Assembly: GCF_003918875.1 (NCBI RefSeq) | Contig: NW_025766669.1 | Span: forward strand, 3,472,001-3,536,000 | DNA: 64,000 nucleotides | Source of the DNA: Haliotis rubra | Lineage: Eukaryota | Reading direction: 5' to 3' | Shown: in pieces, positions 2,785-51,741 of the stretch | How the letters are laid out: each line of letters starts with the position of its first letter | Position numbering within the stretch: position 1 is the first letter of the stretch | Made by a program: the position numbers and the translations under genes | The notes under the pieces: model-generated | Databases searched by the model: none | Told to the model about the DNA's origin: nothing | What the model saw: the letters and a program-made list of their open reading frames with translations, nothing else

Positions 2785-3355
2785 ATGAAGGAAGGAAACA
2801 AAAATATGAAGAACCTGGATGAGAAATTTGTGTTCTGTGCAGTCATGGGAGATAGTATGGTAGGAAAGACCAGCATCTCCGAGACCTATTCTAAGGGATT
2901 CTTTAATGAGAATTCTGAAACCACAGTATTTGACAAATATGTCGTTCCACTGCAAGTCGCTGGAGAGGAGTTTATCATCAGTATGTTCGACACTGCAGGA
3001 AAGGTATGTTTACCGAGATGTTCACTTAAATTTGCGTTAACATTGAGAACAGATAGAGAACATTGAGAAGAGACACTCCAAACAAACCAAACAGAAGAGA
3101 CCGGTCATCCTCGTTGGCACCAAGATAGACCTCCGGGTCGGCAATCAAGACAGCGAGGTTAGCACTGACGAGGGTGTCCAACTGGCCAAGGACATTGGTG
3201 CTGACTGTTATGTGGAGTGCTCGGCCCGCGACCAGAAGGGTTTGAAGGAGGTATTTCAGCATGTTGTCTTCTCCGCTCTCAAATTCAGGAAAAAGAAAAC
3301 CAACATTTTCAAGAAGATGTTCAGACGCAGAAGTGCCTCTTTTGCCAATTATTAA
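2785..3355 (+). pseudogene. Atypical Rho-family GTPase, array copy 1 (A type), internally deleted
   Basis: Exon 1 is 2785-3003 with a GT donor at 3004. Intron sequence runs directly into mid exon 2 near 3062-3070 (..CATTGAGAAGAGACACTCC..), so the acceptor and the first ~40 codons of exon 2 are missing. The stop-equivalent TAA is at 3353-3355. Confidence 0.85.
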
Positions 3356-6602: not shown

Positions 6603-7430
6603 ATGGAAGGAGATAACAAAAATATGAAGAACCTGGATGAGAAATTTGTGTTCTGTGCAGTCATGGGAGATAGTATGGTAGGAAAGACCAGCATCTCCGA
6701 GACCTATTCTAAGGGATTCTTTAATGAGAATTCTGAAACCACGGTGTTTGACAACTATGTCGTTCCACTGCAAGTCGCTGGAGAGGAGTTTGTCATCAGT
6801 ATGTTCGACACTGCAGGAAAGGTATGTTTACTCAGATGGTCGCTTAAATTTCGAGTTAACAATGAGAACAGAACCAGTTACTATGTAAAAGGAATATTGG
6901 ATTAAATATTTCACATTCTGAATTTACAGGAATGGTTCCTATCAATATATTTCAAGGCATCTACGTTTTTCTTCTTTCAATATGTACACATTGTACTGAT
7001 CGTCCCTTCTAATTGTTTTCAGAAACGTTTTTAAAGTCTGAGAATGTTCTCCTACCAGGAATGTGAAGTCCTGCTTCTGTGTTTCTCCACCTGTGACCGG
7101 AAGACATTTCACACTGTCAGTGACCTGTGGATGCCAGAACTGAAGAGACACTCCAAACAAACCAAACAGAAGAGACCGATCATCCTTGTTGGCACCAAGA
7201 TAGACCTCCGGGTCGGCAATCAAGACAGCGAGGTCAGCACGGACGAGGGTGTCCAAATGGCCAAGGACATTGGTGCTGACTGTTATGTGGAGTGCTCGGC
7301 CCGCGACCACAAGGGTTTGAAGGAGGTATTTCAGCATGTTGTCTTCTCCGCTCTCAAATTCAGGAAAAAGAAAACCAACATTTTCAAGAAGATGTTCAGA
7401 CGCAGAAGTGCCTCTTTTGCCAATTATTAA
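6603..7430 (+). pseudogene. Atypical Rho-family GTPase, array copy 2 (B type), premature stop
   Basis: Exons are 6603-6821 and 7023-7430. Exon 2 reads AAA CGT TTT TAA (7032-7034) where intact copies read AAA CGT TTT GAG. Confidence 0.85.
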
Positions 7431-10847: not shown

Positions 10848-11627
10848 ATGAAGGAAGGAAACAAAAATATGAAGAACCTGGATGAGAAATTTGTGTTCTG
10901 TGCAGTCATGGGAGATAGTATGGTAGGAAAGACCAGCATCTCCGAGACCTATTCTAAGGATTCTTAATGGATTCTTTTTGAATGAGAATTCGCTGGAAAC
11001 CACAGTATTTCGACAAATATGTCGTTCCACTTTGCAAGTCGCCATTTACTATGTAAAGGAATATAGGATTAAATATTTCTATGTAAAAGGAATATAGGAT
11101 TAAATATTTCACATTCTGAATTTACAGGAATGGTTCCTATCAATATATTTCAAGACATCTATGATTTTGTTTTTCAATATGTACACATTGTACTGACCGT
11201 CCCTTCTAATTGTTTTCAGAAACGTTTTGAGAGTCTGAGAATGTTCTCCTACCAGGAATGTGAAGTCCTGCTTCTGTGTTTCTCCACCTGTGACCGGAAG
11301 ACATTTCACACTGTCAGTGACCTGTGGATGCTGTGAACTGAAGAGACACTCCAAACAAACCAAACAGAAGAGACCGATCATCCTTGTTGGCACCAAGATA
11401 GACCTCCGAGTAGGGAATGAAGACAGCGTGGTCAGCTCTGACGAGGGTGTCCAACTGGCCAAGGACATTGGTGCTGACTGTTATGTGGAGTGCTCGGCCC
11501 GCGACCACAAGGGTTTGAAGGAGGTCTTTCAGCATGTTGTCTTCTCGCTCTCAAATTCAGGAAAAAGAAAACCAACATTTTCAAGAAGATGTTCAGACGC
11601 AGAAGTGCCTCTTTTGCCAATTATTAA
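10848..11627 (+). pseudogene. Atypical Rho-family GTPase, array copy 3 (A type), scrambled and frameshifted
   Basis: ATG at 10848. There are several small indels at 10955-11040, loss of the exon 1 3' end and donor, a local duplication at ~11048-11110, and indels in exon 2 (starts 11220) near 11331 and 11546. Part of this may be consensus error. Confidence 0.8.
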
Positions 11628-14913: not shown

Positions 14914-15741
14914 ATGAAGGGAGGAAACAAAAATATGAAGAACCTGGATGAGAAATTTGTGTTCTGTGCAGTTATGGGAGATAGTATGGTAGGAAAGACC
15001 AGCATCTCCGAGACCTATTCTAAGGGATTCTTTAATGAGAATTCTGAAACCACAGTATTTGACAACTATGTCGTTCCACTGCAAGTCGCTGGAGAGGAGT
15101 TTGTCATCAGTATGTTCGACACTGCAGGAAAGGTATGTTTACTCAGATGGTCGCTTAAATTCCGCGTTAACAATGAGAACAGAACCAGTTACTATGTAAA
15201 AGGAATATAGGATTAAATATTTCACATTCTGAATTTACAGGAATGGTTCCTATCAATATATTTCAAAGCATCTACGTTTTTCTTCTTTCAATATGTACAC
15301 ATTGTACTGACCGTCCCTTCTAATTGTTTTCAGAAACGTTTTGAGAGTCTGAGAATGTTCTCCTACCAGGAATGTGAAGTCCTGCTTCTGTGTTTCTCCA
15401 CCTGTGACCGGAAGACATTTCACACTGTCAGTGACCTGTGGATGCCAGAACTGAAGAGACACTCCAAACAAACCAAACAGAAGAGACCGGTCATCCTTGT
15501 TGGCACCAAGATAGACCTCCGGGTCGGCAATCAAGACAGCGAGGTCAGCACTGACGAGGGTGTCCAACTGGCCAAGGACATTGGTGCTGACTGTTATGTG
15601 GAGTGCTCGGCCCGCGACCACAAGGGTTTGAAGGAGGTCTTTCAGCATATTGTCTTCTCCGCTCTCAAATTCAGGAAAAAGAAAACCAACATTTTCAAGA
15701 AGCTGTTCAGACGCAGAAGTGCCTCTTTTGCCAATTATTAA
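14914..15741 (+). CDS. Atypical Rho-family small GTPase, array copy 4 (B type), intact, 208 aa
   Basis: join(14914..15132,15334..15741) with a phase-0 GT-AG intron. G1 GDSMVGKT, G2 TVFDNY, G3 DTAGK, G4 GTKID, G5 ECSA. C-terminus KFRKKKTNIFKKLFRRRSASFANY, no CAAX. Confidence 0.93.
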
Positions 15742-16102: not shown

Positions 16103-16108
16103 AATAAA
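16103..16108 (+). terminator. Putative polyadenylation signal of copy 4
   Basis: AATAAA ~360 nt after the stop, followed by a T/GT-rich stretch. It is retained downstream of all array copies, including the diverged copy 7 3' UTR (~29687). Confidence 0.55.
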
Positions 16109-17649
16109 CTATCCATGTTATATATATTTGTTAGTGTCTTGTCTATATATCTCTTAAATGGATACCTTTTTGGACACGTTCAGCTCACAAGAAACACTAG
16201 AAACCTTTTCCTAAAATCATACGAAGCATCAGATCAAAAAACATGATCCGTTGCACAATATGTCAACAACATGTATTTATTAAACACTATGAAATAGTGT
16301 TGATGCCAGGTATTCACGAAAAGATCAGTATATTTTGCTCTCACCAGTACCAAACACAAAAAGTCGAGTTTTTACCTCGAGAAACTCTCACATCAAGCAG
16401 CTTGTGAGAAATAGCATTATGATGGGTCGTATTTCTGGCAATCATGATAGAAAGAACTTGCTGGAATGTTCCTCAAAGTCGTGAAATGAGGACAACAACG
16501 GCTGAAGCTCTTGGAATGTTACACAAAAAACGAAAGTTGACATCTGAACTTATCTCTCTTGTAGGATGGACCTGTCTACAGTTCTGTCACACTTACTCCT
16601 TTTGCTCAGATTTAAATATGAATTCTCACTGGTCACTACATTTGCAAGCTGAGGTAGATAAATCAGTGTCAATAGGAATTGACAGTTTGACAATTATTGA
16701 AATCAAATCACATTATCGATATATACGCATGAAGCTTAAGTTAAACTTCTTGTCCAAATTTCCATGCCAAACAACGTACAAGTATTTGGTTTCTGACAAG
16801 ATTATGTTGTACTAGGACTGAACAGCGAAACATGAATGTTTCAAGTGACTGCTTTACGAATATGAAAATGTAGATGCACACAATATTGACTTGTTTGTAC
16901 AATAAAAGTGAGTGTGAAGAGACTACATTTACCTGTTATGTACTTCGACTGTAAAATAGATACCCATGTGGTCTCTTTTAATCCGGAATTGGAAAGGTGT
17001 TGCTATTGTTTCAATGACAAAGTTTACACTGATCTTGATATTCACTCCGTATACACTTTGATTAATGCTATACGAGAAACAGCTTTACTGACATTTATTA
17101 ACGTAGCCAAAAATGAATAATACAAGTTCCTTCACGTGCGGCGACATGTCTTGATATCTTAACTACTTTCTGCCTTTCGAAACGTCCCAGTTACATGTTT
17201 CCTTCCAACTCAGAAATTAATGGAGTTTAATTCCTACTCTGAAATTAACAGTAAATTAACAATACTGTGACAACGTTTGCCTGGATTGATTGTGTGACTC
17301 CTTGTATACGTGTCGAACACCGAAGTTCGGGAAACACGTATCTGTATTCATGCTGTAATCTGAGTGTACAGTAATGAGGGTGACTGTCTGGAGGTGTTAT
17401 TTCACCACTTATACATAAGCTGTCACTCATCTTGTGGGTTTTCCGGATCACTGACGACGTATCACACATGGCTGAAACGGACATACATGTTGTTCATCCA
17501 AACGATCCGATAAGAAAACATTGTTATATTGATACTGCATTGCTAATCCTTTTATTTGTGTTTATAATCTTACAACAGACAAGTACCACCATCTCCAGTA
17601 AGAGAAGTTGTTTGTTCAACAATAATGTCTGATTTGTTACTTCACTGAT

Positions 17650-17891
17650 GACCCGTGAAGATCCGGGTTAGAATTGATCTTCAGTAACCCATGCTTGTCA
17701 TAGGAGGCGACTAACGGGATCGAGTGGTCCGATTCGCTGACTTGGCCGACACATGTCGTATCCCAATTGCGTAGATCGATGCTCATGCTGGTGATCACTG
17801 GATTGTCTGGTGCAGACTCGATTATTTACAGACCGCCACGACATAGCTGGAATATTGCTGAGTGCGACGCAAAACTAAACTCACTCACTCA
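17650..17891 (+). mobile_element. SINE-like family A (array-duplicated copy)
   Basis: Same element and site as 1256-1500. Confidence 0.9.
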
Positions 17892-19175
17892 CTTCATTGA
17901 TAGTTTCTGACTTAAATAGTACAAGGTGTAACCCAATGCTTAGAAAGCCCAGTTTGATGGCGTCAACATCAAGAACCAACATTTCACTTGGATGTTCATA
18001 TGACATTTAGCCAAACACCTCAGAAGCATCCAAATGCACACATTGCATTGTCTCATTTTTAAAAGCATTTCTCGTCTTCCTGTTTTACCAACTTCCAAAA
18101 GTCAAGCAATGACTTTAATAAACATGTCACATCTACCTACACATACTGATAATGTTCTTTTACAACACAGAAACCAACTCAAGCCCCTCGAAGTAACCAA
18201 GGTTTTGTTGGACAAGTTCTGTTCGTCTGTCTTCCATCCAACGCCGCCTTATCTTTATTTTCAAGGAAAACAACCACATTCATTTGTATGAATCCAATCA
18301 GCCGTGTTTGCTTAGCCCCTCTGAAGCAGACAAATACAGAATTAGACGTATATTTCACAGAATTCCTCTAATTTGAAAGATACTAATAATTAGTAAACGC
18401 ATCTGCATATATTGAACCAGACGCTGGAAATATATGCTGTTTAGACTGGGACAAAAGCATAAATTAAACGAAAAACAAGCAAAGATCTCCCAAACAAATA
18501 TATGTTTGGGAAAGAAAAAACTGAAAACATTCTCACCCCTGACTATGTAATATTTCCTGAAATACTTTAGTGCTGTGGTAAACAATATAACAAACAGGTG
18601 ATGGTAACATCTGACAGGTAACGTCAGACATTCATAAAACACCGTACATCAAATCAAAAACAAACACATGAGGCAGTCAAATTGCAAAACTTAATCATGT
18701 ATGAGGGAGCAAAATTGCTAACACTTTCCATTCAAATAAACTGTTGGAGTTGAATTTGCAGTGATGTTATTTTAATACTGAAACTCATTTCGTGTCTCTT
18801 CCATCTGTATTGTTTCACACAGTTACCAATTATCCAGAGAGACTAATCCCTACATTTGATTAATCCAATCCGACGTATTTGCTTAACCACTCAGAATTAT
18901 ACAACGAAGTAACACAAGAAAACATATTGGCAGTAGTGTTATGTGTGACTGGTCAAGCGTTCAGAGAAACAAATACTCTAATTAGACAGCTACTGATCAT
19001 TGTCTGTCGATCACGAACGAGACAGCTCAAGACGATCATCTCAGACTTTGACACTGATACTTCCCTAATTAGAGGTTAAGTCTTCTGATTGGTCGGGAAT
19101 ATCTTTATATTAAAATCTTCACAAGGTACTAACAGCAAACGTGTTGTAGATTTAGATCGATAAACAAGCTTAAAC

Positions 19176-20001
19176 ATGAAGGAAGGAAACAAAAATATGA
19201 AGAACCTGGATGAGAAATTTGTGTTCTGTGCAGTCATGGGAGATAGTATGGTAGGAAAGACCAGCATCTCCGAGACCTATTCTAAGGGATTCTTTAATGA
19301 GAATTCTGAAACCACAGTATTTGACAACTATGTCGTTCCACTGCAAGTCGCTGGAGAGGAGTTTATCATCAGTATGTTCGACACTGCAGGAAAGGTATGT
19401 TTACTCAGATGTTCACTTAAATTTGCGTTAACATTGAGAACAGATCCATTTACTATGTAAAAGGAATATAGGATTAAATATTTCACATTCTGAATTTACA
19501 GGAATGGTTCCTATCAATATATTTCAAGGCATCTATGATTTTCTTCTTTCAATATGTACACATTGTACTGACCGTCCCTTCTAATTGTTTTCAGAAACGT
19601 TTGAGAGTCTGAGAATGTTCTCCTACCAGGAATGTGAAGTCCTGCTTCTGTGTTTCTCCACCTGTGACCGGAAGACATTTCACACTGTCAGTGACCTGTG
19701 GATGCCAGAACTGAAGAGACACTCCAAACAAACCAAACAGAAAAGACCGATCATCCTCGTTGGCACCAGGATAGACCTCCGAGTAGGGAATGAAGACAGC
19801 GTGGTCAGCTCAGACGAGGGTGTCCAACTGGCCAAGGACATTGGTGCTGACTGTTATGTGGAGTGCTCGGCCCGCGACCACAAGGGTTTGAAGGAGGTCT
19901 TTCAGCATGTTGTCTTCTCCGCTCTCAAATTCAGGAAAAAGAAAACCAACATTCTCAAGAAGATGTTCAGACGCAGAAGTGCCTCTTTTGCCAATTATTA
20001 A
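19176..20001 (+). pseudogene. Atypical Rho-family GTPase, array copy 5 (A type), 1-nt frameshift
   Basis: Exons are 19176-19394 and 19595-20001. The T run has 3 instead of 4 T (AAACGTTTGAG), giving TGA at 19610-19612. G4 reads GTRID. A homopolymer sequencing error is possible. Confidence 0.7.
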
Positions 20002-23243: not shown

Positions 23244-24071
23244 ATGAAGGGAGGAAACAAAAATATGAAGACCCTGGATGAGAAATTTGTGTTCTGTGCA
23301 GTTATGGGAGATAGTATGGTAGGAAAGACCAGCATCTCCGAGACCTATTCTAAGGGATTCTTTAATGAGAATTCTGAAACCACAGTATTTGACAACTATG
23401 TCGTTCCACTGCAAGTCGCTGGAGAGGAGTTTGTCATCAGTATGTTCGACACTGCAGGAAAGGTATGTTTACTCAGATGGTCGCTTAAATTTCGAGTTAA
23501 CATTGAGAACAGAACCAGTTACTATGTAAAAGGAATATAGGATTAAATATTTCACATTCTGAATTTACAGGAATGGTTCCTATCAATATATTTCAAGGCA
23601 TCTACGTTTTTCTTCTTTCAATATGTACACATTGTACTGACCGTCCCTTCTAATTGTTTTCAGAAACGTTTTGAGAGTCTGAGAATGTTCTCCTACCAGG
23701 AATGTGAAGTCCTGCTTCTGTGTTTCTCCACCTGTGACCGGAAGACATTTCACACTGTCAGTGACCTGTGGATGCCAGAACTGAAGAGACACTCCAAACA
23801 AACCAAACAGAAGAGACCGGTCATCCTTGTTGGCACCAAGATAGACCTCCGGGTCGGCAATCAAGACAGCGAGGTCAGCACGGACGAGGGTGTCCAACTG
23901 GCCAAGGACATTGGTGCTGACTGTTATGTGGAGTGCTCGGCCCACGACCACAAGGGTTTGAAGGAGGTCTTTCAGCATGTTGTCTTCTCCGCTCTCAAAT
24001 TCAGGAAAAAGAAAACCAACATTTTCAAGAAGATGTTCAGACGCAGAAGTGCCTCTTTTGCCAATTATTAA
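23244..24071 (+). CDS. Atypical Rho-family small GTPase, array copy 6 (B type), intact, 208 aa
   Basis: join(23244..23462,23664..24071). Same G-box motifs as copy 4, with the variant ECSAHDH. Confidence 0.93.
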
Positions 24072-28472: not shown

Positions 28473-29300
28473 ATGGAAGGAGATAACAAAAATATGAAGA
28501 ACCTGGATGAGAAATTTGTGTTCTGTGCAGTCATGGGAGATAGTATGGTAGGAAAGACCAGCATCTCCGAGACCTATTCTAAGGGATTCTTTAATGAGAA
28601 TTCTGAAACCACAGTATTTGACAACTATGTCGTTCCACTGCAAGTCGCTGGAGAGGAGTTTGTCATCAGTATGTTCGACACTGCAGGAAAGGTATGTTTA
28701 CTCAGATGTTCGCTTAAATTTCGAGTTAACATTGAGAACAGAAACAGCTGCTATGTAAAAGGAACATCGAACTAAATATTTCACATCTGAATTTATAGGA
28801 ATGGTTCCTATTCAATATATTTCAAGGCATCTATGTTTTTCTTCTTTCAAAATGTACACATTGTACTGATCGTCCCTTCTAATTGTTTTCAGAAACGTTT
28901 TGAGAGTCTGAGAATGTTCTCCTACCAGGAATGTGAAGTCCTGCTTCTGTGTTTCTCCACCTGTGACCGGAAGACATTTCACACTGTCAGTGACCTGTGG
29001 ATGCCAGAACTGAAGAGACACTCCAAACAAACCAAACAGAAGAGACCGGTCATCCTCGTTGGCACCAAGATAGACCTCCGGGTCGGCAATGAAGACAGCG
29101 AGGTTAGCACTGACGAGGGTGTCCAACTGGCCAAGGACATTGGTGCTGACTGTTATGTGGAGTGCTCGGCCCGCGACCAGAAGGGTTTGAAGGAGGTCTT
29201 TCAGCATGTTGTCTTCTCCGCTCTCAAATTCAGGAAAAAGAAAACCAACATTCTCAAGAAGCTGTTCAGACGCAGAAGTGCCTCTTTTGCCAACTATTAA
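28473..29300 (+). CDS. Atypical Rho-family small GTPase, array copy 7 (terminal, B-like), intact, 208 aa
   Basis: join(28473..28691,28893..29300). GDSMVGKT, DTAGK, GTKID and ECSA are present. The 3' UTR is diverged from copies 1-6. Confidence 0.93.
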
Positions 29301-32039: not shown

Positions 32040-32952
32040 AATAGGATAAATAAACTTGCTAACACTTTCCATTCAAATGAACTGTTGGAGTTGAATTTGC
32101 AGTGATGTTATTTTAATACTGAAACTCATCTCGTGTCTCTTCCATCTGTATTGTTTCACCCAGTCTCAATTATCCAGAAACACTAATCCCTACATTCGAT
32201 TAATCCAATCCGACGTATTTGCTTAACCACTCAGAATTAGACAACGAGGAACACCAGAAAACATACTGGCAGTGGTGCTATATGTCACTAATCAAGCGTT
32301 GAGATCCAAACAAATACTCTAATTAGACAGCTACTGATCATTGTCTGTCGTTTACGAACGAGACAGCTCAAGACGGTCATCTCAGACTTTGACACCAATG
32401 AGAGCACGTGATACCTCCCTAATTAGAGGTTATGTCTTCAGGTTAATCGGGAATATCTATCTATTTTATCCCAACAATGTACTCACCTCCGCCTTCGAAA
32501 TTCGCATTGTGTCGGAAAGCGCTCGTAAAATCGCCAAAGTCATCATCATTGATGGATCGATAGATAAGCATGAAGATTGGAAAAAAAGATATGGGTGAGG
32601 TGAGGTGAAATTGGGTTTAACGTCGTTCTTGAGAATATTTCGCTCAAATGACGACGTGCATGCGAGTTTATGTGTATGTGCGGCTGCTTGTACTAGCCCA
32701 GACTGAAGCTGGTTTTATAGTGCTAGCCCTCTGAGATACCATGCCGCAGTGAAGCATGAATACCCCACTCAGACACATTATACTGACTCCGAGCCGACCA
32801 GTCCTTGTTGTACCCATTAATGCCGAACGCCAGGCAGGGACCAACAAGTACCATATTTTAACGTCTTTTGGTATGACGCGGTCGGGGATCGAACCCGCGA
32901 CCTTCCGCTCTCCGGTCGGGAAAAAAAAAGATATGAAGAACCTTGATGATGT
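32040..32952 (+). pseudogene. Remnant of an 8th array-type GTPase copy (promoter region plus first codons)
   Basis: 32040-32490 aligns with the array upstream region. ATGAAGATTGGAAAAAAAGATATG (32570) and GATATGAAGAACCTTGATGAT (32930-32950) match the exon 1 start M-K-x-G-x-K-x-MKNLD, split by a SINE. The rest of the gene is absent. Confidence 0.75.
32594..32917 (-). mobile_element. 5'-truncated tRNA-derived SINE family C
   Basis: Minus strand has B box GGTTCGATCCC, body GTCATACCAAAAGACGTTAAAATATGGTAC..TGCCTGGCGTTCGGCATTAA (resembles the Meta-SINE central domain from memory, unverified) and a (CACCT)n tail. Flanked by a GGAAAAAAA(A)GATATG duplication. Confidence 0.85.
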
Positions 32953-43942: not shown

Positions 43943-44797
43943 ATGAAAGACACCAATAGGAAGGGCGATGACGAAAAATACATCTCCTGCGCCATCATGG
44001 GAGACGGCATGGTCGGCAAGACCAGCATCTCCGAGAGCTATGCTCAGAAATCCTTCAAGGAGAACTATGAAGCCACAGTGTTTGACAACTATGTCGTCCC
44101 ACTGCAGGTCGCTGGAGAGGAGTTTGTCATCAGCATGTTTGACACAGCAGGAAAGGTGAGATCTTTATAATGTCATCGGATGGCTTTTCGTTTGAGGATG
44201 AATTTTTGTGACTGTCTCCTTAGATGGGCTTGCCAATGTCTGTTGTATCGATCAGTAATTATACGTATAGCACTATGATTCATTTACACTGACTAAATGT
44301 CAGATGCATTATTGATTTCACAGATTACTAAAAATGAGAATAGAAGGTCTTCATGCATATTCTCGTGGATCTTCAGATAACAATATGTTTACCTTCGAAC
44401 TTTCGTTTTTCAGAAAACCTTTGAGAATCTTCGTTCCTTCACATACTGTGAGAGTGAAGTCCTGCTTCTGTGTTTCTCCACCTGTGACCGGGAGACGTTG
44501 GCCAGCATCAATGACCTGTGGATGCCAGAACTGAAGAGACATTCCAAACATGCCAAACAGAAGAGACCGATCATCCTTGTGGGCACCCAGATTGACCTCC
44601 AGGTCGGGAATGAAGACAGCGAGGTCAGCACGGACGAGGGTGTCCAACTGGCCAAGGACATTGGTGCTGACTGTTATGTGGAGTGCTCGGCCCGCGACCA
44701 CAAGGGTTTGAAGGAAGTCTTTCAGCATGTTGTCTTCTCCGCTCTGAAATTCAGGAAGAAGAACACGAACATTATCAAGAAGATCTTTAGACGTTGA
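43943..44797 (+). CDS. Atypical Rho-family small GTPase, divergent paralog (copy 9), intact, 198 aa
   Basis: join(43943..44155,44414..44797), with the intron at the same position and phase as in the array. GDGMVGKT, YEATVFDNY, DTAGK|KTFENLRSFTY, GTQID, YVECSA. Ends KFRKKNTNIIKKIFRR. Confidence 0.93.
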
Positions 44798-50742: not shown

Positions 50743-51741
50743 ATGAAGGGTAGCAATATGAAGAATGATGAGCAGAAATACATCTCCTGCGCCATCATGG
50801 GAGACGGCATGGTCGGCAAGACCAGCATCTCCGAGAGCTATGCTCAGAAATCCTTCAAGGAGAACTATGAAGCCACAGTGTTTGACAACTATGTCGTTCC
50901 ACTGCAGGTTGCTGGAGAGGAGTTTGTCATCAGCATGTTTGACACAGCAGGAAAGGTGAGGATATGTTTCAACTTTTCTCGGTTATTGACAGTACATGTA
51001 TTATATATATGTTTTTAGTATCAGTTGGGGCGGTGGGGTAGCCGAATAGTTAAAGCTTTCGCTCCTCTCACCGAAGACCGGGTTCCATTCCCCAAATGGG
51101 AACAATGTGTGAAGCCCAATTCTGGTGTCCCCTGCCGTAGTATTGCTGGAATAATACCAAAATAAGCGTAAAACTAGACTCATTTTGTATTATTTAATTA
51201 GGACAGCCCCTCAAACATGTCACGATAACTGTGTACATTGTTAATTCTAAGTAGCTATGCTAATGTCTTAATACACTTTCAAATGAAAAAATTGCCAAAC
51301 CTGATGCTTTAAAAAAAATCACATATTTACCATTGCTATTTCAATTTTCAGAAAAACTTTGAGAATCTTCGTTCCTTCACATACCGTGAGAGTGAAGTCC
51401 TGCTTCTGTGTTTCTCCACCTGTGACCGGGAGACGTTGGCCAGCATCAATGACCTGTGGATGCCAGAACTTAAGAGACACTCCAAACATGCCAAACAGAA
51501 GAGACCGGTCATCCTCGTGGGCACCCAGATTGACCTCCGGGTCGGGAATGAAGACAGCGAGGTCAGCACGGACGAGGGTGTCCAACTGGCCAAGGACATT
51601 GGTGCTGACTGTTATGTGGAGTGCTCGGCTCGCGACCACAAGGGTTTGAAGGAAGTCTTTCAGCATGTTGTCTTCTCCGCTCTGAAATTCAGGAAGAAGA
51701 ACACGAACATTATCAAACAGATTTTCAGATCGATACATTAA
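50743..51741 (+). CDS. Atypical Rho-family small GTPase, divergent paralog (copy 10), intact, 200 aa
   Basis: join(50743..50955,51352..51741). GDGMVGKT, DTAGK|KNFENLRSFTY, GTQID, YVECSA. Ends KFRKKNTNIIKQIFRSIH. The intron carries a SINE. Confidence 0.93.
51027..51182 (+). mobile_element. tRNA-derived SINE family B in the intron of copy 10
   Basis: GGGGCGGTGGGGTAGCCGAATAGTTAAAGC..GGTTCCATTCCC..GCTGGAATA. Confidence 0.88.

What the first reader, a model, noticed from the sequence alone, without database searches (positions are those of the whole stretch)
15661..15741. No CAAX box: a polybasic amphipathic tail replaces prenylation, with a possible phospho-switch in array copies only
Seen: the termini are KFRKKKTNIFKK(M/L)FRRRSASFANY (array), KFRKKNTNIIKKIFRR (copy 9) and KFRKKNTNIIKQIFRSIH (copy 10). 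None has a Cys. The pattern IFKKLF / IIKKIF / IIKQIF keeps hydrophobic residues at helical spacing even where the DNA has diverged. Established: canonical Rho proteins need CAAX prenylation for membrane and RhoGDI binding, whereas Rit/Rin and RGK GTPases use unlipidated polybasic-hydrophobic tails. Inference: these proteins bind membranes electrostatically and independently of GDI. The array-specific extension RRRSASF fits basophilic kinase (RRxS, RxxS) and 14-3-3-like motifs and could act as an off switch.
Basis: partly seen in the sequence, partly recalled or inferred. Interest (0 to 1): 0.7.

Follow-up and report, generated by a model that had tools for sequence, protein, structure and literature searches.

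The report
Abalone Rho-like GTPases without lipid anchor
These abalone genes belong to a mollusc-wide, apparently undescribed branch of Rho-type switch proteins that has no lipid-anchor signal and ends instead in a conserved basic, greasy helix, probably a reversible membrane anchor that some copies may switch off by phosphorylation.

Summary
All seven array copies in the window end ...KFRKKKTNI(F/L)KK(M/L)FRRRSASFANY. Copy 9 ends ...IIKKIFRR and copy 10 ...IIKQIFRSIH. None has a Cys.

The window is blacklip abalone (Haliotis rubra). The genes are two-exon Rho-like GTPases whose nearest solved relatives are TC10 and Cdc42.

The CAAX-less tail is the signature of a well-supported clade in gastropods and bivalves. 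Its core is R-K-K-K-x-x-Φ-Φ-x-[KR]-Φ-Φ. By contrast, 126 of 161 other Rho hits carry CAAX. AlphaFold2 runs helix α5 on through the tail.

A hidden CAAX exon is very unlikely. Codon-level conservation reaches the stop, AATAAA lies about 362 nt downstream in every array copy, and the tail codons hold no good splice donor.

"Array copies only" is wrong. RR[RK]S[AG]SF also occurs in a non-array paralog, in two other abalone species and in a metagenomic relative. The extension probably arose when the ancestral TGA stop was lost.

Membrane binding and the phospho-switch remain inference. They are modelled closely on Rad (RGK) and RIT. The 14-3-3 motif is imperfect, the hydrophobic moment is only moderate, and I found no RNA data for the array. 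Four of the seven in-window array copies are broken.

I rate it a new variant of a known kind, of moderate interest.

The parts
14914..15132 (+). Exon 1 of intact array copy c4 (Met to DTAGK; P-loop reads GDSMVGKT)
   Evidence: Open frame ending at the donor AAG|GTATGT. It matches residues 1-73 of NCBI protein P0001.
15334..15741 (+). Exon 2 of c4 (KRFESLRMF... to the stop), holding the rest of the G domain and the tail
   Evidence: Acceptor TTTTCAG| and a 201-nt intron. The spliced product is 208 aa with Pfam Ras at E 1.6e-37.
15664..15714 (+). Tail core LKFRKKKTNIFKKLFRR: a polybasic run followed by Phi-Phi-x-x-Phi-Phi, the family signature
   Evidence: Conserved in gastropod and bivalve members. 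AF2 predicts a helix continuous with alpha5. Net charge is +9 in 18 residues and muH is 0.48-0.60.
15715..15738 (+). Extension RSASFANY; together with the preceding RR it forms RRRSASF, a basophilic-kinase consensus (RRxS and RxRxxS-Phi)
   Evidence: Present in all array copies. It is homologous codon for codon to RRKSGSFTSY of paralog L010, with the stop at the same position, and is conserved in H. asinina and H. cracherodii.
15739..15741 (+). TAA stop codon, the true end of the coding sequence
   Evidence: The stop is at the same position in all array copies and in L010. NCBI models in Haliotis species end here.
16103..16108 (+). AATAAA poly(A) signal of c4
   Evidence: It is the first AATAAA, 362-363 nt after the stop in c1-c6 and 387 nt after it in c7.
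23244..24071 (+). Intact array copy c6 (tail at 23991-24071)
28473..29300 (+). Intact array copy c7 (tail at 29220-29300, with NILKKLF)
2785..3355 (+). Array copy c1, with a deletion that removes most of the intron and the first ~119 nt of exon 2; tail intact at 3275-3355
   Evidence: NCBI models it as the 173-aa protein P0009.
6603..7430 (+). Array copy c2, with a TAA nonsense codon early in exon 2; tail at 7350-7430
10848..11627 (+). Array copy c3, a pseudogene with several stops and frameshifts; tail at 11547-11627
19176..20001 (+). Array copy c5, with a 1-nt deletion in the T run at the start of exon 2 (a frameshift, or a homopolymer assembly error); tail at 19921-20001
43943..44797 (+). 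Copy 9 (exons 43943-44155 and 44414-44797). It ends ...IIKKIFRR-TGA, and the TGA sits where the array has AGA
50743..51741 (+). Copy 10 (exons 50743-50955 and 51352-51741). It ends ...IIKQIFRSIH-TAA

Best explanation
The stop codon at 15739-15741 is the real end of the protein.

These genes belong to a mollusc-wide clade of Rho-like small GTPases. The clade lacks any prenylation or palmitoylation signal. It also lacks most of the Rho insert. Instead, helix alpha5 is prolonged into a strongly basic helix with one hydrophobic face. The consensus is L-K-[YF]-R-K-K-K-x-x-[IVL]-[FIL]-x-[KR]-[ILF]-[FL].

Most likely this helix holds the protein reversibly on acidic inner-leaflet membranes (PS, phosphoinositides). 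Electrostatics would do most of the work, with shallow insertion of the Ile/Phe/Leu face. This is how the C-termini of RIT and the RGK GTPases work. RhoGDI could not extract such a protein, because there is no isoprenoid for its pocket.

In one abalone subclade the ancestral TGA stop was lost. Eight to nine 3'UTR-derived codons were added, giving RR[RK]S[AG]SF..Y. This subclade comprises the array, the non-array paralog L010, and their orthologues in other Haliotis species.

The two serines fit AGC/CaMK-type basophilic kinase sites. Phosphorylating them would take about 4 units off a +10 tail and weaken membrane binding, as the Rad phosphoswitch does. 14-3-3 capture is possible but less well founded.

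Such a localisation switch makes particular sense here. The array proteins carry Ser at Ras position 12 and Lys at position 61, so they probably cannot be switched off by GTP hydrolysis.

Shown: the termini, the absence of Cys, family-wide conservation, purifying selection on the tail, the predicted helix, and the homology and wider distribution of the extension.
Inferred: membrane binding, GDI independence, phosphorylation and its effect.
For: - Termini: read directly from the sequence.
- Gene models: c4, c6 and c7 have canonical splice sites.
- Family assignment: Pfam Ras at E 1.6e-37. The nearest solved structures are TC10 and Cdc42, with a 9-residue gap at the Rho insert.
- Distribution: gastropod and bivalve homologues all end in the same Cys-less basic-hydrophobic tail, while other Rho hits end in CAAX.
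- Monophyly: the CAAX-less clade has SH-aLRT 98 on a tree built without the tail columns.
- Structure: the AF2 model has mean pLDDT 90.7 and a single helix over residues 172-206.
- Physical properties: +9 charge in 18 residues and muH 0.48-0.60.
- Selection: tail dN/dS is 0.23 against 0.27 for the G-domain part of exon 2, c4 versus L010.
- Extension: it aligns codon for codon between the array and L010 with the same stop position. c9 has TGA where the array has AGA. Ancestral-type L003 reads R-TGA-S-F-A-F-V-stop.
- Wider occurrence of the extension: paralog L010/P0004, H. asinina, H. cracherodii, and metagenomic P0020, which lies outside the derived clade.
- 3' end: AATAAA lies 362-387 nt after the stop in all array copies, and the tail codons hold only two GT dinucleotides, both poor donors.
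- Transcript evidence from a relative: a 1.1-kb contig from another snail carries an uninterrupted 191-aa coding sequence ending ...FFTR-stop plus a 285-nt 3'UTR.
- Mechanistic precedent: the Rad C-terminal phosphoswitch, whose authors call absence of CAAX a prerequisite for phosphoregulation (PMC10904049), and the basic C-terminal lipid binding of RIT1/2 (PMC13565119).
Against: - No experiment or RNA data bear on these proteins. The runs I could reach were DNA of a relative, or tiny possibly-RNA sets that covered only paralog exon 2.
- The hydrophobic moment is not exceptional for a single tail (8-10% of shuffles reach it).
- AF2 tends to draw isolated basic tails as helices, and confidence falls to 64 at the very end.
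- RKKK also looks like a classical nuclear localisation signal.
- Basic amphipathic helices are typical calmodulin-binding sites.
- The 14-3-3 motif lacks Pro at +2.
- Two phosphates would still leave the tail at about +6.
- Four of the seven in-window array copies are broken, so part of the array is decaying.
- Several paralogs (c9, c10, L011) have lost the extension, so it is dispensable for some functions.
Confidence: 0.5

Rival explanations
1. The basic amphipathic helix is mainly a protein-binding site. It could bind Ca2+/calmodulin, as the C-termini of Gem/Kir, Rad, RIT and K-Ras4B do, or it could dock an effector. Any membrane association would be secondary.
For: The tail is a conserved, strongly basic helix with bulky hydrophobics at i, i+1, i+4 and i+5. 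This is the general character of calmodulin targets. A review in the library covers calmodulin binding to polybasic GTPase tails (PMC7279331, listed; I did not read it in detail).
Against: The tail has no clean 1-8-14 or 1-5-10 anchor spacing. Calmodulin binding and membrane binding coexist in the RGK proteins, so this is not exclusive of the main reading. Nothing here tests it.
Confidence: 0.2
2. The RKKK cluster is a classical nuclear localisation signal, and these GTPases act in the nucleus. On this view the phosphoserines would regulate import rather than membrane binding.
For: R-K-K-K is invariant or nearly so across the family. It matches the monopartite K-K/R-x-K/R pattern, which I cite from general knowledge.
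Against: The flanking conserved hydrophobics argue against it. Hydrophobic residues next to a polybasic cluster favour the plasma membrane and prevent NLS function. This is the finding of Heo et al. 2006 as summarised in PMC10904049.
Confidence: 0.1
3. The array tails have no current function. The array would be a recent, decaying tandem duplication, and its uniform tails would reflect recency and gene conversion rather than selection.
For: Four of the seven in-window copies are broken yet keep perfect tails. The copies are 96-98% identical in DNA, flanks included. No RNA evidence was found.
Against: Intact 208-aa orthologues with the same extension exist in H. asinina (88% identity) and H. 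cracherodii (85%). Tail dN/dS against the older paralog L010 is 0.23. Three in-window copies and the copy just upstream of the window (L004, identical to P0001) are intact.
Confidence: 0.12
4. The annotated stop is not the real end, and a further exon supplies a CAAX box.
For: Only that I could lay no RNA reads on the array.
Against: Coding constraint and codon-for-codon homology run up to the shared stop. The tail codons have no usable donor, and AATAAA lies 362 nt downstream. About 70 homologues from many molluscs end in the same region. These include single-ORF genomic pieces and a transcript-like contig.
Confidence: 0.03

Closest known systems
RGK GTPases (Rad, Rem, Gem/Kir), especially the Rad C-terminal phosphoswitch
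   Same: Both lack CAAX and have a polybasic-hydrophobic C-terminus that binds the acidic inner leaflet. In Rad, serines in basophilic-kinase context inside the tail are phosphorylated by PKA, which releases the protein, and adding a CAAX abolishes the switch (PMC10904049). RGK proteins also show non-canonical nucleotide handling.
   Different: RGK proteins belong to the Ras branch, have long N- and C-terminal extensions, and act on CaV-beta subunits. The abalone proteins are Rho-like (nearest TC10/Cdc42), have a tail of only ~25 residues, and show no detectable homology to RGK tails.
RIT1/RIT2 (Rit/Rin)
   Same: These are Ras-superfamily GTPases without a lipidation motif. They bind membranes and phosphoinositides through a basic C-terminal extension (PMC13565119).
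   Different: They belong to the Ras branch and the tail sequence is unrelated. No tandem-array expansion is known for them.
Rnd3/RhoE and RhoH (GTPase-deficient atypical Rho proteins)
   Same: Both carry substitutions at Ras positions 12 and 61 (here Ser12 and Lys61 in the array). They are regulated by phosphorylation and localisation rather than by hydrolysis, and Rnd3 is sequestered by 14-3-3 after phosphorylation near its C-terminus (general knowledge).
   Different: Rnd and RhoH keep a CAAX box and are prenylated, and Rnd3's 14-3-3 binding uses the farnesyl group. The abalone proteins have no Cys.
Insect RhoL and Cdc42/TC10 (nearest sequence relatives with CAAX)
   Same: These are the best-scoring non-family hits. 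RhoL shares the unusual P-loop GDGMVGKT. TC10 and Cdc42 are the nearest solved structures.
   Different: They all end in CAAX and have a full Rho insert. The tree does not resolve which is the sister group.
C. elegans CHW-1, RhoBTB and Miro (Rho-family members without CAAX)
   Same: They show that Rho-family proteins can lack prenylation (PMC5982818; PMC7600811).
   Different: CHW-1 is a RhoU/V homologue that is presumed not to need membrane targeting. RhoBTB and Miro are large multidomain proteins. None has the RKKK-x-x-Phi-Phi-x-x-Phi-Phi tail.

Membership tests
Rho family of small GTPases | Ras-type G domain most similar to Rho/Rac/Cdc42 | tested here: met
   Pfam PF00071 at E 1.6e-37. The top PDB hits are TC10 and Cdc42 at E ~1e-35. 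NCBI names the proteins Cdc42 homolog or RhoJ-like.
Rho family of small GTPases | Rho insert helix (~13 residues between beta5 and alpha4) | tested here: not met
   HMMER alignments to TC10 and Cdc42 need a 9-residue gap at the insert. AF2 shows only a 3-residue turn between strand 126-131 and helix 146-155.
Rho family of small GTPases | C-terminal CAAX (or CXX) lipidation motif | tested here: not met
   No Cys follows alpha5 in any window copy. The same holds for most family members.
CAAX-less polybasic-tail GTPases (functional class: RIT, RGK) | Unlipidated C-terminus that combines a Lys/Arg cluster with hydrophobic residues | tested here: met
   The tail has 10 Lys/Arg, no acidic residue, and Ile/Phe/Leu/Phe at i, i+1, i+4 and i+5.
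CAAX-less polybasic-tail GTPases (functional class: RIT, RGK) | Demonstrated binding to acidic membranes or phosphoinositides | not testable with these tools
   This needs localisation or liposome assays.
CAAX-less polybasic-tail GTPases (functional class: RIT, RGK) | Homology of the G domain to RIT or RGK proteins | tested here: not met
   The best relatives are Rho-family proteins throughout. The resemblance is functional, not by descent.
GTPase-deficient atypical Rho (Rnd/RhoH type) | Substitutions at Ras positions 12 and 61 | tested here: met
   The array has GDSMVGKT and DTAGK. Copies 9 and 10 have GDGMVGKT and DTAGK. The ancestral-type L014/P0010 has GDGMVGKT and DTAGQ. Loss of hydrolysis itself was not tested.
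Basophilic kinase site (PKA RRxS; Akt/RSK RxRxxS-Phi) | Arg at -3 and -2, or at -5 and -3, of a Ser, with a hydrophobic residue at +1 | tested here: met
   In RRRSASF the first Ser has Arg at -3, -2 and -1. The second has Arg at -5, -4 and -3 and Phe at +1. R-R-[RK]-S-x-S-F is conserved in L010, P0002-P0004 and P0020. Actual phosphorylation was not tested.
14-3-3 mode I site (R-S-x-pS-x-P) | Arg at -3, Ser at -2 and Pro at +2 | tested here: not met
   R-S-A-S-F-A has Ala, Thr or Val at +2 in every copy. The match is partial. The serines also lie too far from the C-terminus for mode III.

The most novel reading that the evidence does not exclude
Molluscs have a distinct, so far unnamed Rho subfamily. 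In it an electrostatic-hydrophobic helix replaced prenylation and GDI cycling before gastropods and bivalves split. In abalone, GTPase-dead paralogs (Ser12/Lys61) were then put under a purely kinase-controlled membrane on/off switch, created when the stop codon was lost and 3'UTR became coding. A bolder sub-case also remains open. Ancestral-type genes keep a TGA stop followed in frame by remnants of the phospho-extension (L003: SFAFV-stop; L014: KSLSQNW). These genes might make a minor extended isoform by stop-codon readthrough.
Probability: 0.25. Interest if true: 0.65.

Novelty: new variant of a known kind. Interest (0 to 1): 0.5.

Why it matters
Prenylation and RhoGDI are treated as defining parts of Rho regulation. 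A whole molluscan clade that dropped CAAX and most of the Rho insert would show otherwise. It would mean the Rho fold can run on the RIT/RGK style of membrane control.

That would be a natural case of convergence between Ras-branch and Rho-branch GTPases. The abalone paralogs form a ready-made series for testing how charge, hydrophobic face and phosphosites set membrane residence:
- short tail
- tail with RRRS only
- tail with the full RR[RK]SxSF extension
- catalytic Gln versus Lys at position 61

There is also a practical point. These genes are annotated as "Cdc42 homolog" or "RhoJ-like" in abalone and snail genomes, and that label is misleading for transcriptome studies of immunity and development.

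Tried and rejected
- RNA evidence. Two run searches and the single read-laying run gave no usable transcript data for the array. X1 and X6 proved to be DNA of a related species, because introns and intergenic DNA were covered. X9 and X10 are tiny sets guessed to be RNA. They covered only part of exon 2 at 90-95% identity, and their contigs diverge from the array at about the FRR codons. They therefore stem from paralogs of another species and say nothing about the array's 3' end.
- Exact-sequence look-up of P0001 found nothing, because records of this genome are withheld there.
- A tail-only word search with the Solemya protein returned only 5 candidates and is uninformative about non-mollusc members. 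I did not run the large profile search, so "mollusc-restricted" rests on two word-based searches only.
- The bacterial promoter/terminator scan does not apply to a eukaryotic 3'UTR and was a wasted call.
- Amphipathicity as a statistical claim for one sequence is rejected as strong evidence. 8-10% of shuffles reach the observed moment. The argument rests on conservation of the pattern across the family instead.
- A downstream CAAX exon is rejected (see rivals).
- N-terminal myristoylation as an alternative anchor is rejected. The window copies start MK... or ME..., not MG.
- Homology of c9/c10 3'UTRs to the extension was inconclusive in a DNA alignment beyond the first two or three codons. The stop-loss argument rests mainly on TGA versus AGA at the same codon and on L003's R-TGA-S-F-A.
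Full report
**1. What is at the coordinates**

Positions 15661-15741 are the last 26 codons and the stop of a two-exon gene: exon 1 at 14914-15132, a 201-nt GT..AG intron, and exon 2 at 15334-15741. The 208-aa product is a small GTPase. Pfam Ras scores E 1.6e-37. The nearest solved structures are TC10 and Cdc42 (E ~1e-35).

The best database hit, at 98% identity, is a Haliotis rubra protein that NCBI names "cell division control protein 42 homolog". Other notes of this scan on the same genome also call it blacklip abalone. The window is G000:C1779:3472001-3536000.

**2. The observation**

- Seven array copies read KFRKKKTNI(F/L)KK(M/L)FRRRSASFANY-stop.
- Copy 9 reads KFRKKNTNIIKKIFRR-stop.
- Copy 10 reads KFRKKNTNIIKQIFRSIH-stop.
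- None contains Cys.

The array unit is about 4.2 kb and 96-98% identical between copies, flanks included. An eighth array copy lies just upstream of the window (locus L004).

Not all copies are genes. Copies c4, c6 and c7 are intact. Copy c1 has lost most of the intron and the start of exon 2. Copy c2 has a TAA. Copy c3 is broken several times. Copy c5 has a 1-nt deletion in a T run at the start of exon 2, which could also be an assembly error. Uniform tails within the array therefore say nothing about selection. The comparison has to go outside the array.

**3. The tail defines a family**

Two word-based searches of the large protein collection were run, one with the array protein and one with the Gigantopelta homologue. 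Together they returned about 70 proteins ending in the same kind of tail.
- Gastropods: Haliotis (four species), Gigantopelta, Patella, Pomacea, Batillaria, Littorina, Nucella, Babylonia, Biomphalaria, Bradybaena, Elysia.
- Bivalves: Solemya, Tegillarca, Mactra, Sinanodonta, Potamilus.

The consensus after alpha5 is L-K-[YF]-R-K-K-K-x-x-[IVL]-[FIL]-x-[KR]-[ILF]-[FL]-x-[RK]. Among 55 members scored by a pattern, the first Arg is invariant and the next three positions are Lys/Arg in 53-55 (the last of them Asn in 7). The four hydrophobic positions are hydrophobic in at least 54. Of the 161 other proteins retrieved, 126 end in CAAX; those others include a few family members that the pattern missed.

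A maximum-likelihood tree built on the G domain only, with the tail columns removed, unites all Cys-less mollusc proteins with SH-aLRT 98. The nearest outsiders by score are insect RhoL proteins. They share the odd P-loop GDGMVGKT but keep CAAX. The sister group is not resolved.

The family also lacks most of the Rho insert, with a 9-residue gap against TC10/Cdc42.

A survey of bivalve Rho genes lists Cdc42, Mig, RhoU, Rho, TC10, RhoBTB and Miro and reports CAAX boxes, but does not mention this group (PMC4669188). I found no paper that describes it.

**4. Is the stop the real end?**

Several lines say yes.
- The tail of c4 and that of the older paralog L010 align codon for codon up to a stop at the same position (TAA versus TAG). 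They differ by 6.5 synonymous and 7.5 non-synonymous changes. Tail dN/dS is 0.23, like the 0.27 of the G-domain part of exon 2.
- The first AATAAA lies 362-363 nt after the stop in six array copies and 387 nt after it in the seventh.
- The tail codons contain only two GT dinucleotides, matching the donor consensus at 2 and 5 of 9 positions.
- Gene models in four Haliotis species end in the same region.
- Metagenomic single-ORF pieces of exon 2 also end there.
- A 1.1-kb contig from another snail carries an uninterrupted 191-aa coding sequence ending FFTR-stop, followed by 285 nt of 3'UTR.

Direct RNA evidence for the array could not be obtained (see Tried and rejected).

**5. Physical character of the tail**

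AlphaFold2, run with an 81-sequence alignment, gives a confident Rho-like fold (mean pLDDT 90.7, pTM 0.86). It draws alpha5 as one helix from residue 172 to 206. Confidence falls from 92 to 77 to 64 along the tail.

The best 18-residue window has net charge +9, low mean hydrophobicity, and a helical hydrophobic moment of 0.48 (0.60 for the best 11 residues). For a single sequence this is only moderately unusual, since 8-10% of shuffles reach it. The case for an amphipathic helix therefore rests on family-wide conservation of Phi-Phi-x-x-Phi-Phi, not on the moment itself.

None of the window copies starts with Met-Gly, so N-myristoylation is not an alternative anchor.

**6. The extension is not array-only**

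RR[RK]S[AG]SF..Y is found in five places:
- the array;
- its orthologues in H. asinina (RRRSASFANY) and H. cracherodii (RRRSASFVNY);
- a separate paralog of H. rubra on the opposite strand about 9 kb upstream of the window (L010, RRKSGSFTSY);
- the H. asinina counterpart of that paralog (P0004, RRKSGSFVSY);
- a metagenomic exon-2 piece (P0020, RRKSGSFSITR).

On a short exon-2 tree, P0020 falls outside the derived Haliotis clade, next to the ancestral-type genes. That tree has only 97 columns and is weakly resolved. Paralog L011/P0012 keeps RRRS and then stops.

On the G-domain tree the extension-bearing Haliotis proteins form one subclade (SH-aLRT 93). That subclade sits inside a Haliotis-specific expansion, which is sister to an ancestral-type gene (P0010/L014: Gly12, Gln61, tail ...IFSR).

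What stays constant in the extension is R-R-[RK]-S-x-S-F, while the last three or four residues vary. This fits selection on a basophilic-kinase site. The first Ser matches RRxS. The second matches RxRxxS followed by a hydrophobic residue. The fit to 14-3-3 mode I is incomplete, because no Pro occurs at +2.

**7. Origin of the extension**

Copy 9 and the ancestral-type genes stop with TGA exactly where the array has AGA and L010 has AAA.

In an ancestral-type gene from a hydrothermal-vent metagenome (L003), the sequence reads CGC TGA AGT TTC GCC TTC GTA TAG, that is R-stop-S-F-A-F-V-stop. The array reads CGC AGA AGT GCC TCT TTT GCC AAT TAT TAA, that is R-R-S-A-S-F-A-N-Y-stop.

The simplest reading is that one substitution removed the stop and the first 3'UTR codons became coding. 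Some paralogs (c9, c10, L011) then regained early stops, or never lost the original one.

The in-frame resemblance after the TGA leaves open a low-probability alternative of stop-codon readthrough. L014 also shows it, reading K-S-L-S-Q-N-W after the stop. I do not favour readthrough, because the base after the TGA is A, not the context usually linked to readthrough.

**8. Mechanism and precedent**

In Rad, PKA phosphorylates two serines inside a polybasic, hydrophobic, CAAX-less C-terminal domain. This lowers the domain's charge and releases the protein from the plasma membrane. Mutating two Phe residues has the same effect. Appending a CAAX box abolishes the switch. The authors state that absence of CAAX is a prerequisite for such phosphoregulation (PMC10904049). 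RIT1 and RIT2 likewise bind lipids through a basic C-terminal extension (PMC13565119).

The abalone array proteins carry Ser at position 12 and Lys at position 61. These changes inactivate hydrolysis in other atypical Rho proteins, which makes control through localisation more plausible. That hydrolysis is lost, that the tail binds membranes, that RhoGDI is bypassed, and that the serines are phosphorylated are all inferences.

**9. Verdict**

"No CAAX, conserved basic-hydrophobic tail" is solid and is a family trait. "Replaces prenylation as a membrane anchor" is the most likely reading but is untested. "Phospho-switch" is plausible and supported by motif conservation. "Array copies only" is wrong.

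The proteins are already in public databases under misleading names, and the mechanism class is known from RIT and RGK. The new element is its occurrence as the defining feature of an undescribed mollusc-wide Rho-like clade, with a stop-loss-derived regulatory extension in abalone.

Noticed in passing
Proteins P0123, P0124, P0128, P0129, P0145, P0147, P0150, P0153, P0154 (caenogastropods and metagenomic pieces): In caenogastropods the same tail core is followed, in the same exon, by a 20-30 residue extension that starts G-[DE]-R-T-L-S-N-K-S (again an RxxS site). It ends in a terminal Cys (-SC) or Cys-Cys (-VSCC). This may mean a non-CAAX, Rab-like or palmitoyl lipidation was re-acquired in that lineage.
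   Followed up: partly
L003 (vent metagenome), L014 (G000:C1779:3591755-3592144), L001 (snail transcript-like contig): Ancestral-type genes stop with TGA. In frame after it come residues resembling the extension: SFAFV-stop in L003, KSLSQNW in L014, TLNSD in L001. This fits a stop-loss origin of the abalone extension. Stop-codon readthrough is not excluded.
   Followed up: partly
L020 and L021 (G000:C1398:15238-15615 and C2246:209155-209532): Another, more distant Rho-like gene (about 36-41% identity) also lacks CAAX and ends ...CPKKKKKFWRSFKQLFKKNEK-stop. It is a second polybasic-hydrophobic tail type in the same genome. The two loci look like duplicate assemblies of one region.
   Followed up: no
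L016 (G000:C1779:3680077-3680445, minus strand): A further divergent family member (57% identity) lies about 145 kb downstream of the window on the same contig and ends ...SALKDRKRKGNILRRLFKK-stop. The cluster therefore spans at least 236 kb, with at least 14 family loci.
   Followed up: partly
window 17610-17997: The summed contig depth in two DNA runs of a related species reaches millions here, against about 50 elsewhere, with many rearranged joints. This is a very high-copy repeat (SINE- or satellite-like) sitting between array copies 4 and 5.
   Followed up: no
window 32416-32486: A 71-bp fragment, 79% identical to the 5' end of the array unit, lies about 2.6 kb past the end of the last array unit (29784). 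It is probably the stump of a further, lost unit.
   Followed up: no
L014 versus the window copies: The ancestral-type gene has an extra intron inside what is exon 1 in the array copies (after ...TVFENYA). The derived paralogs have therefore lost one intron.
   Followed up: no
window 15460-15490 (KRHSKQTKQKRP) and its homologues: A basic loop insertion after helix alpha3 is shared by Haliotis and by the two metagenomic vetigastropod-like pieces (P0018, P0020). It is shorter in Gigantopelta and other gastropods (KRHTKRRRP). AF2 draws it as a prolonged alpha3 (residues 99-120).
   Followed up: no
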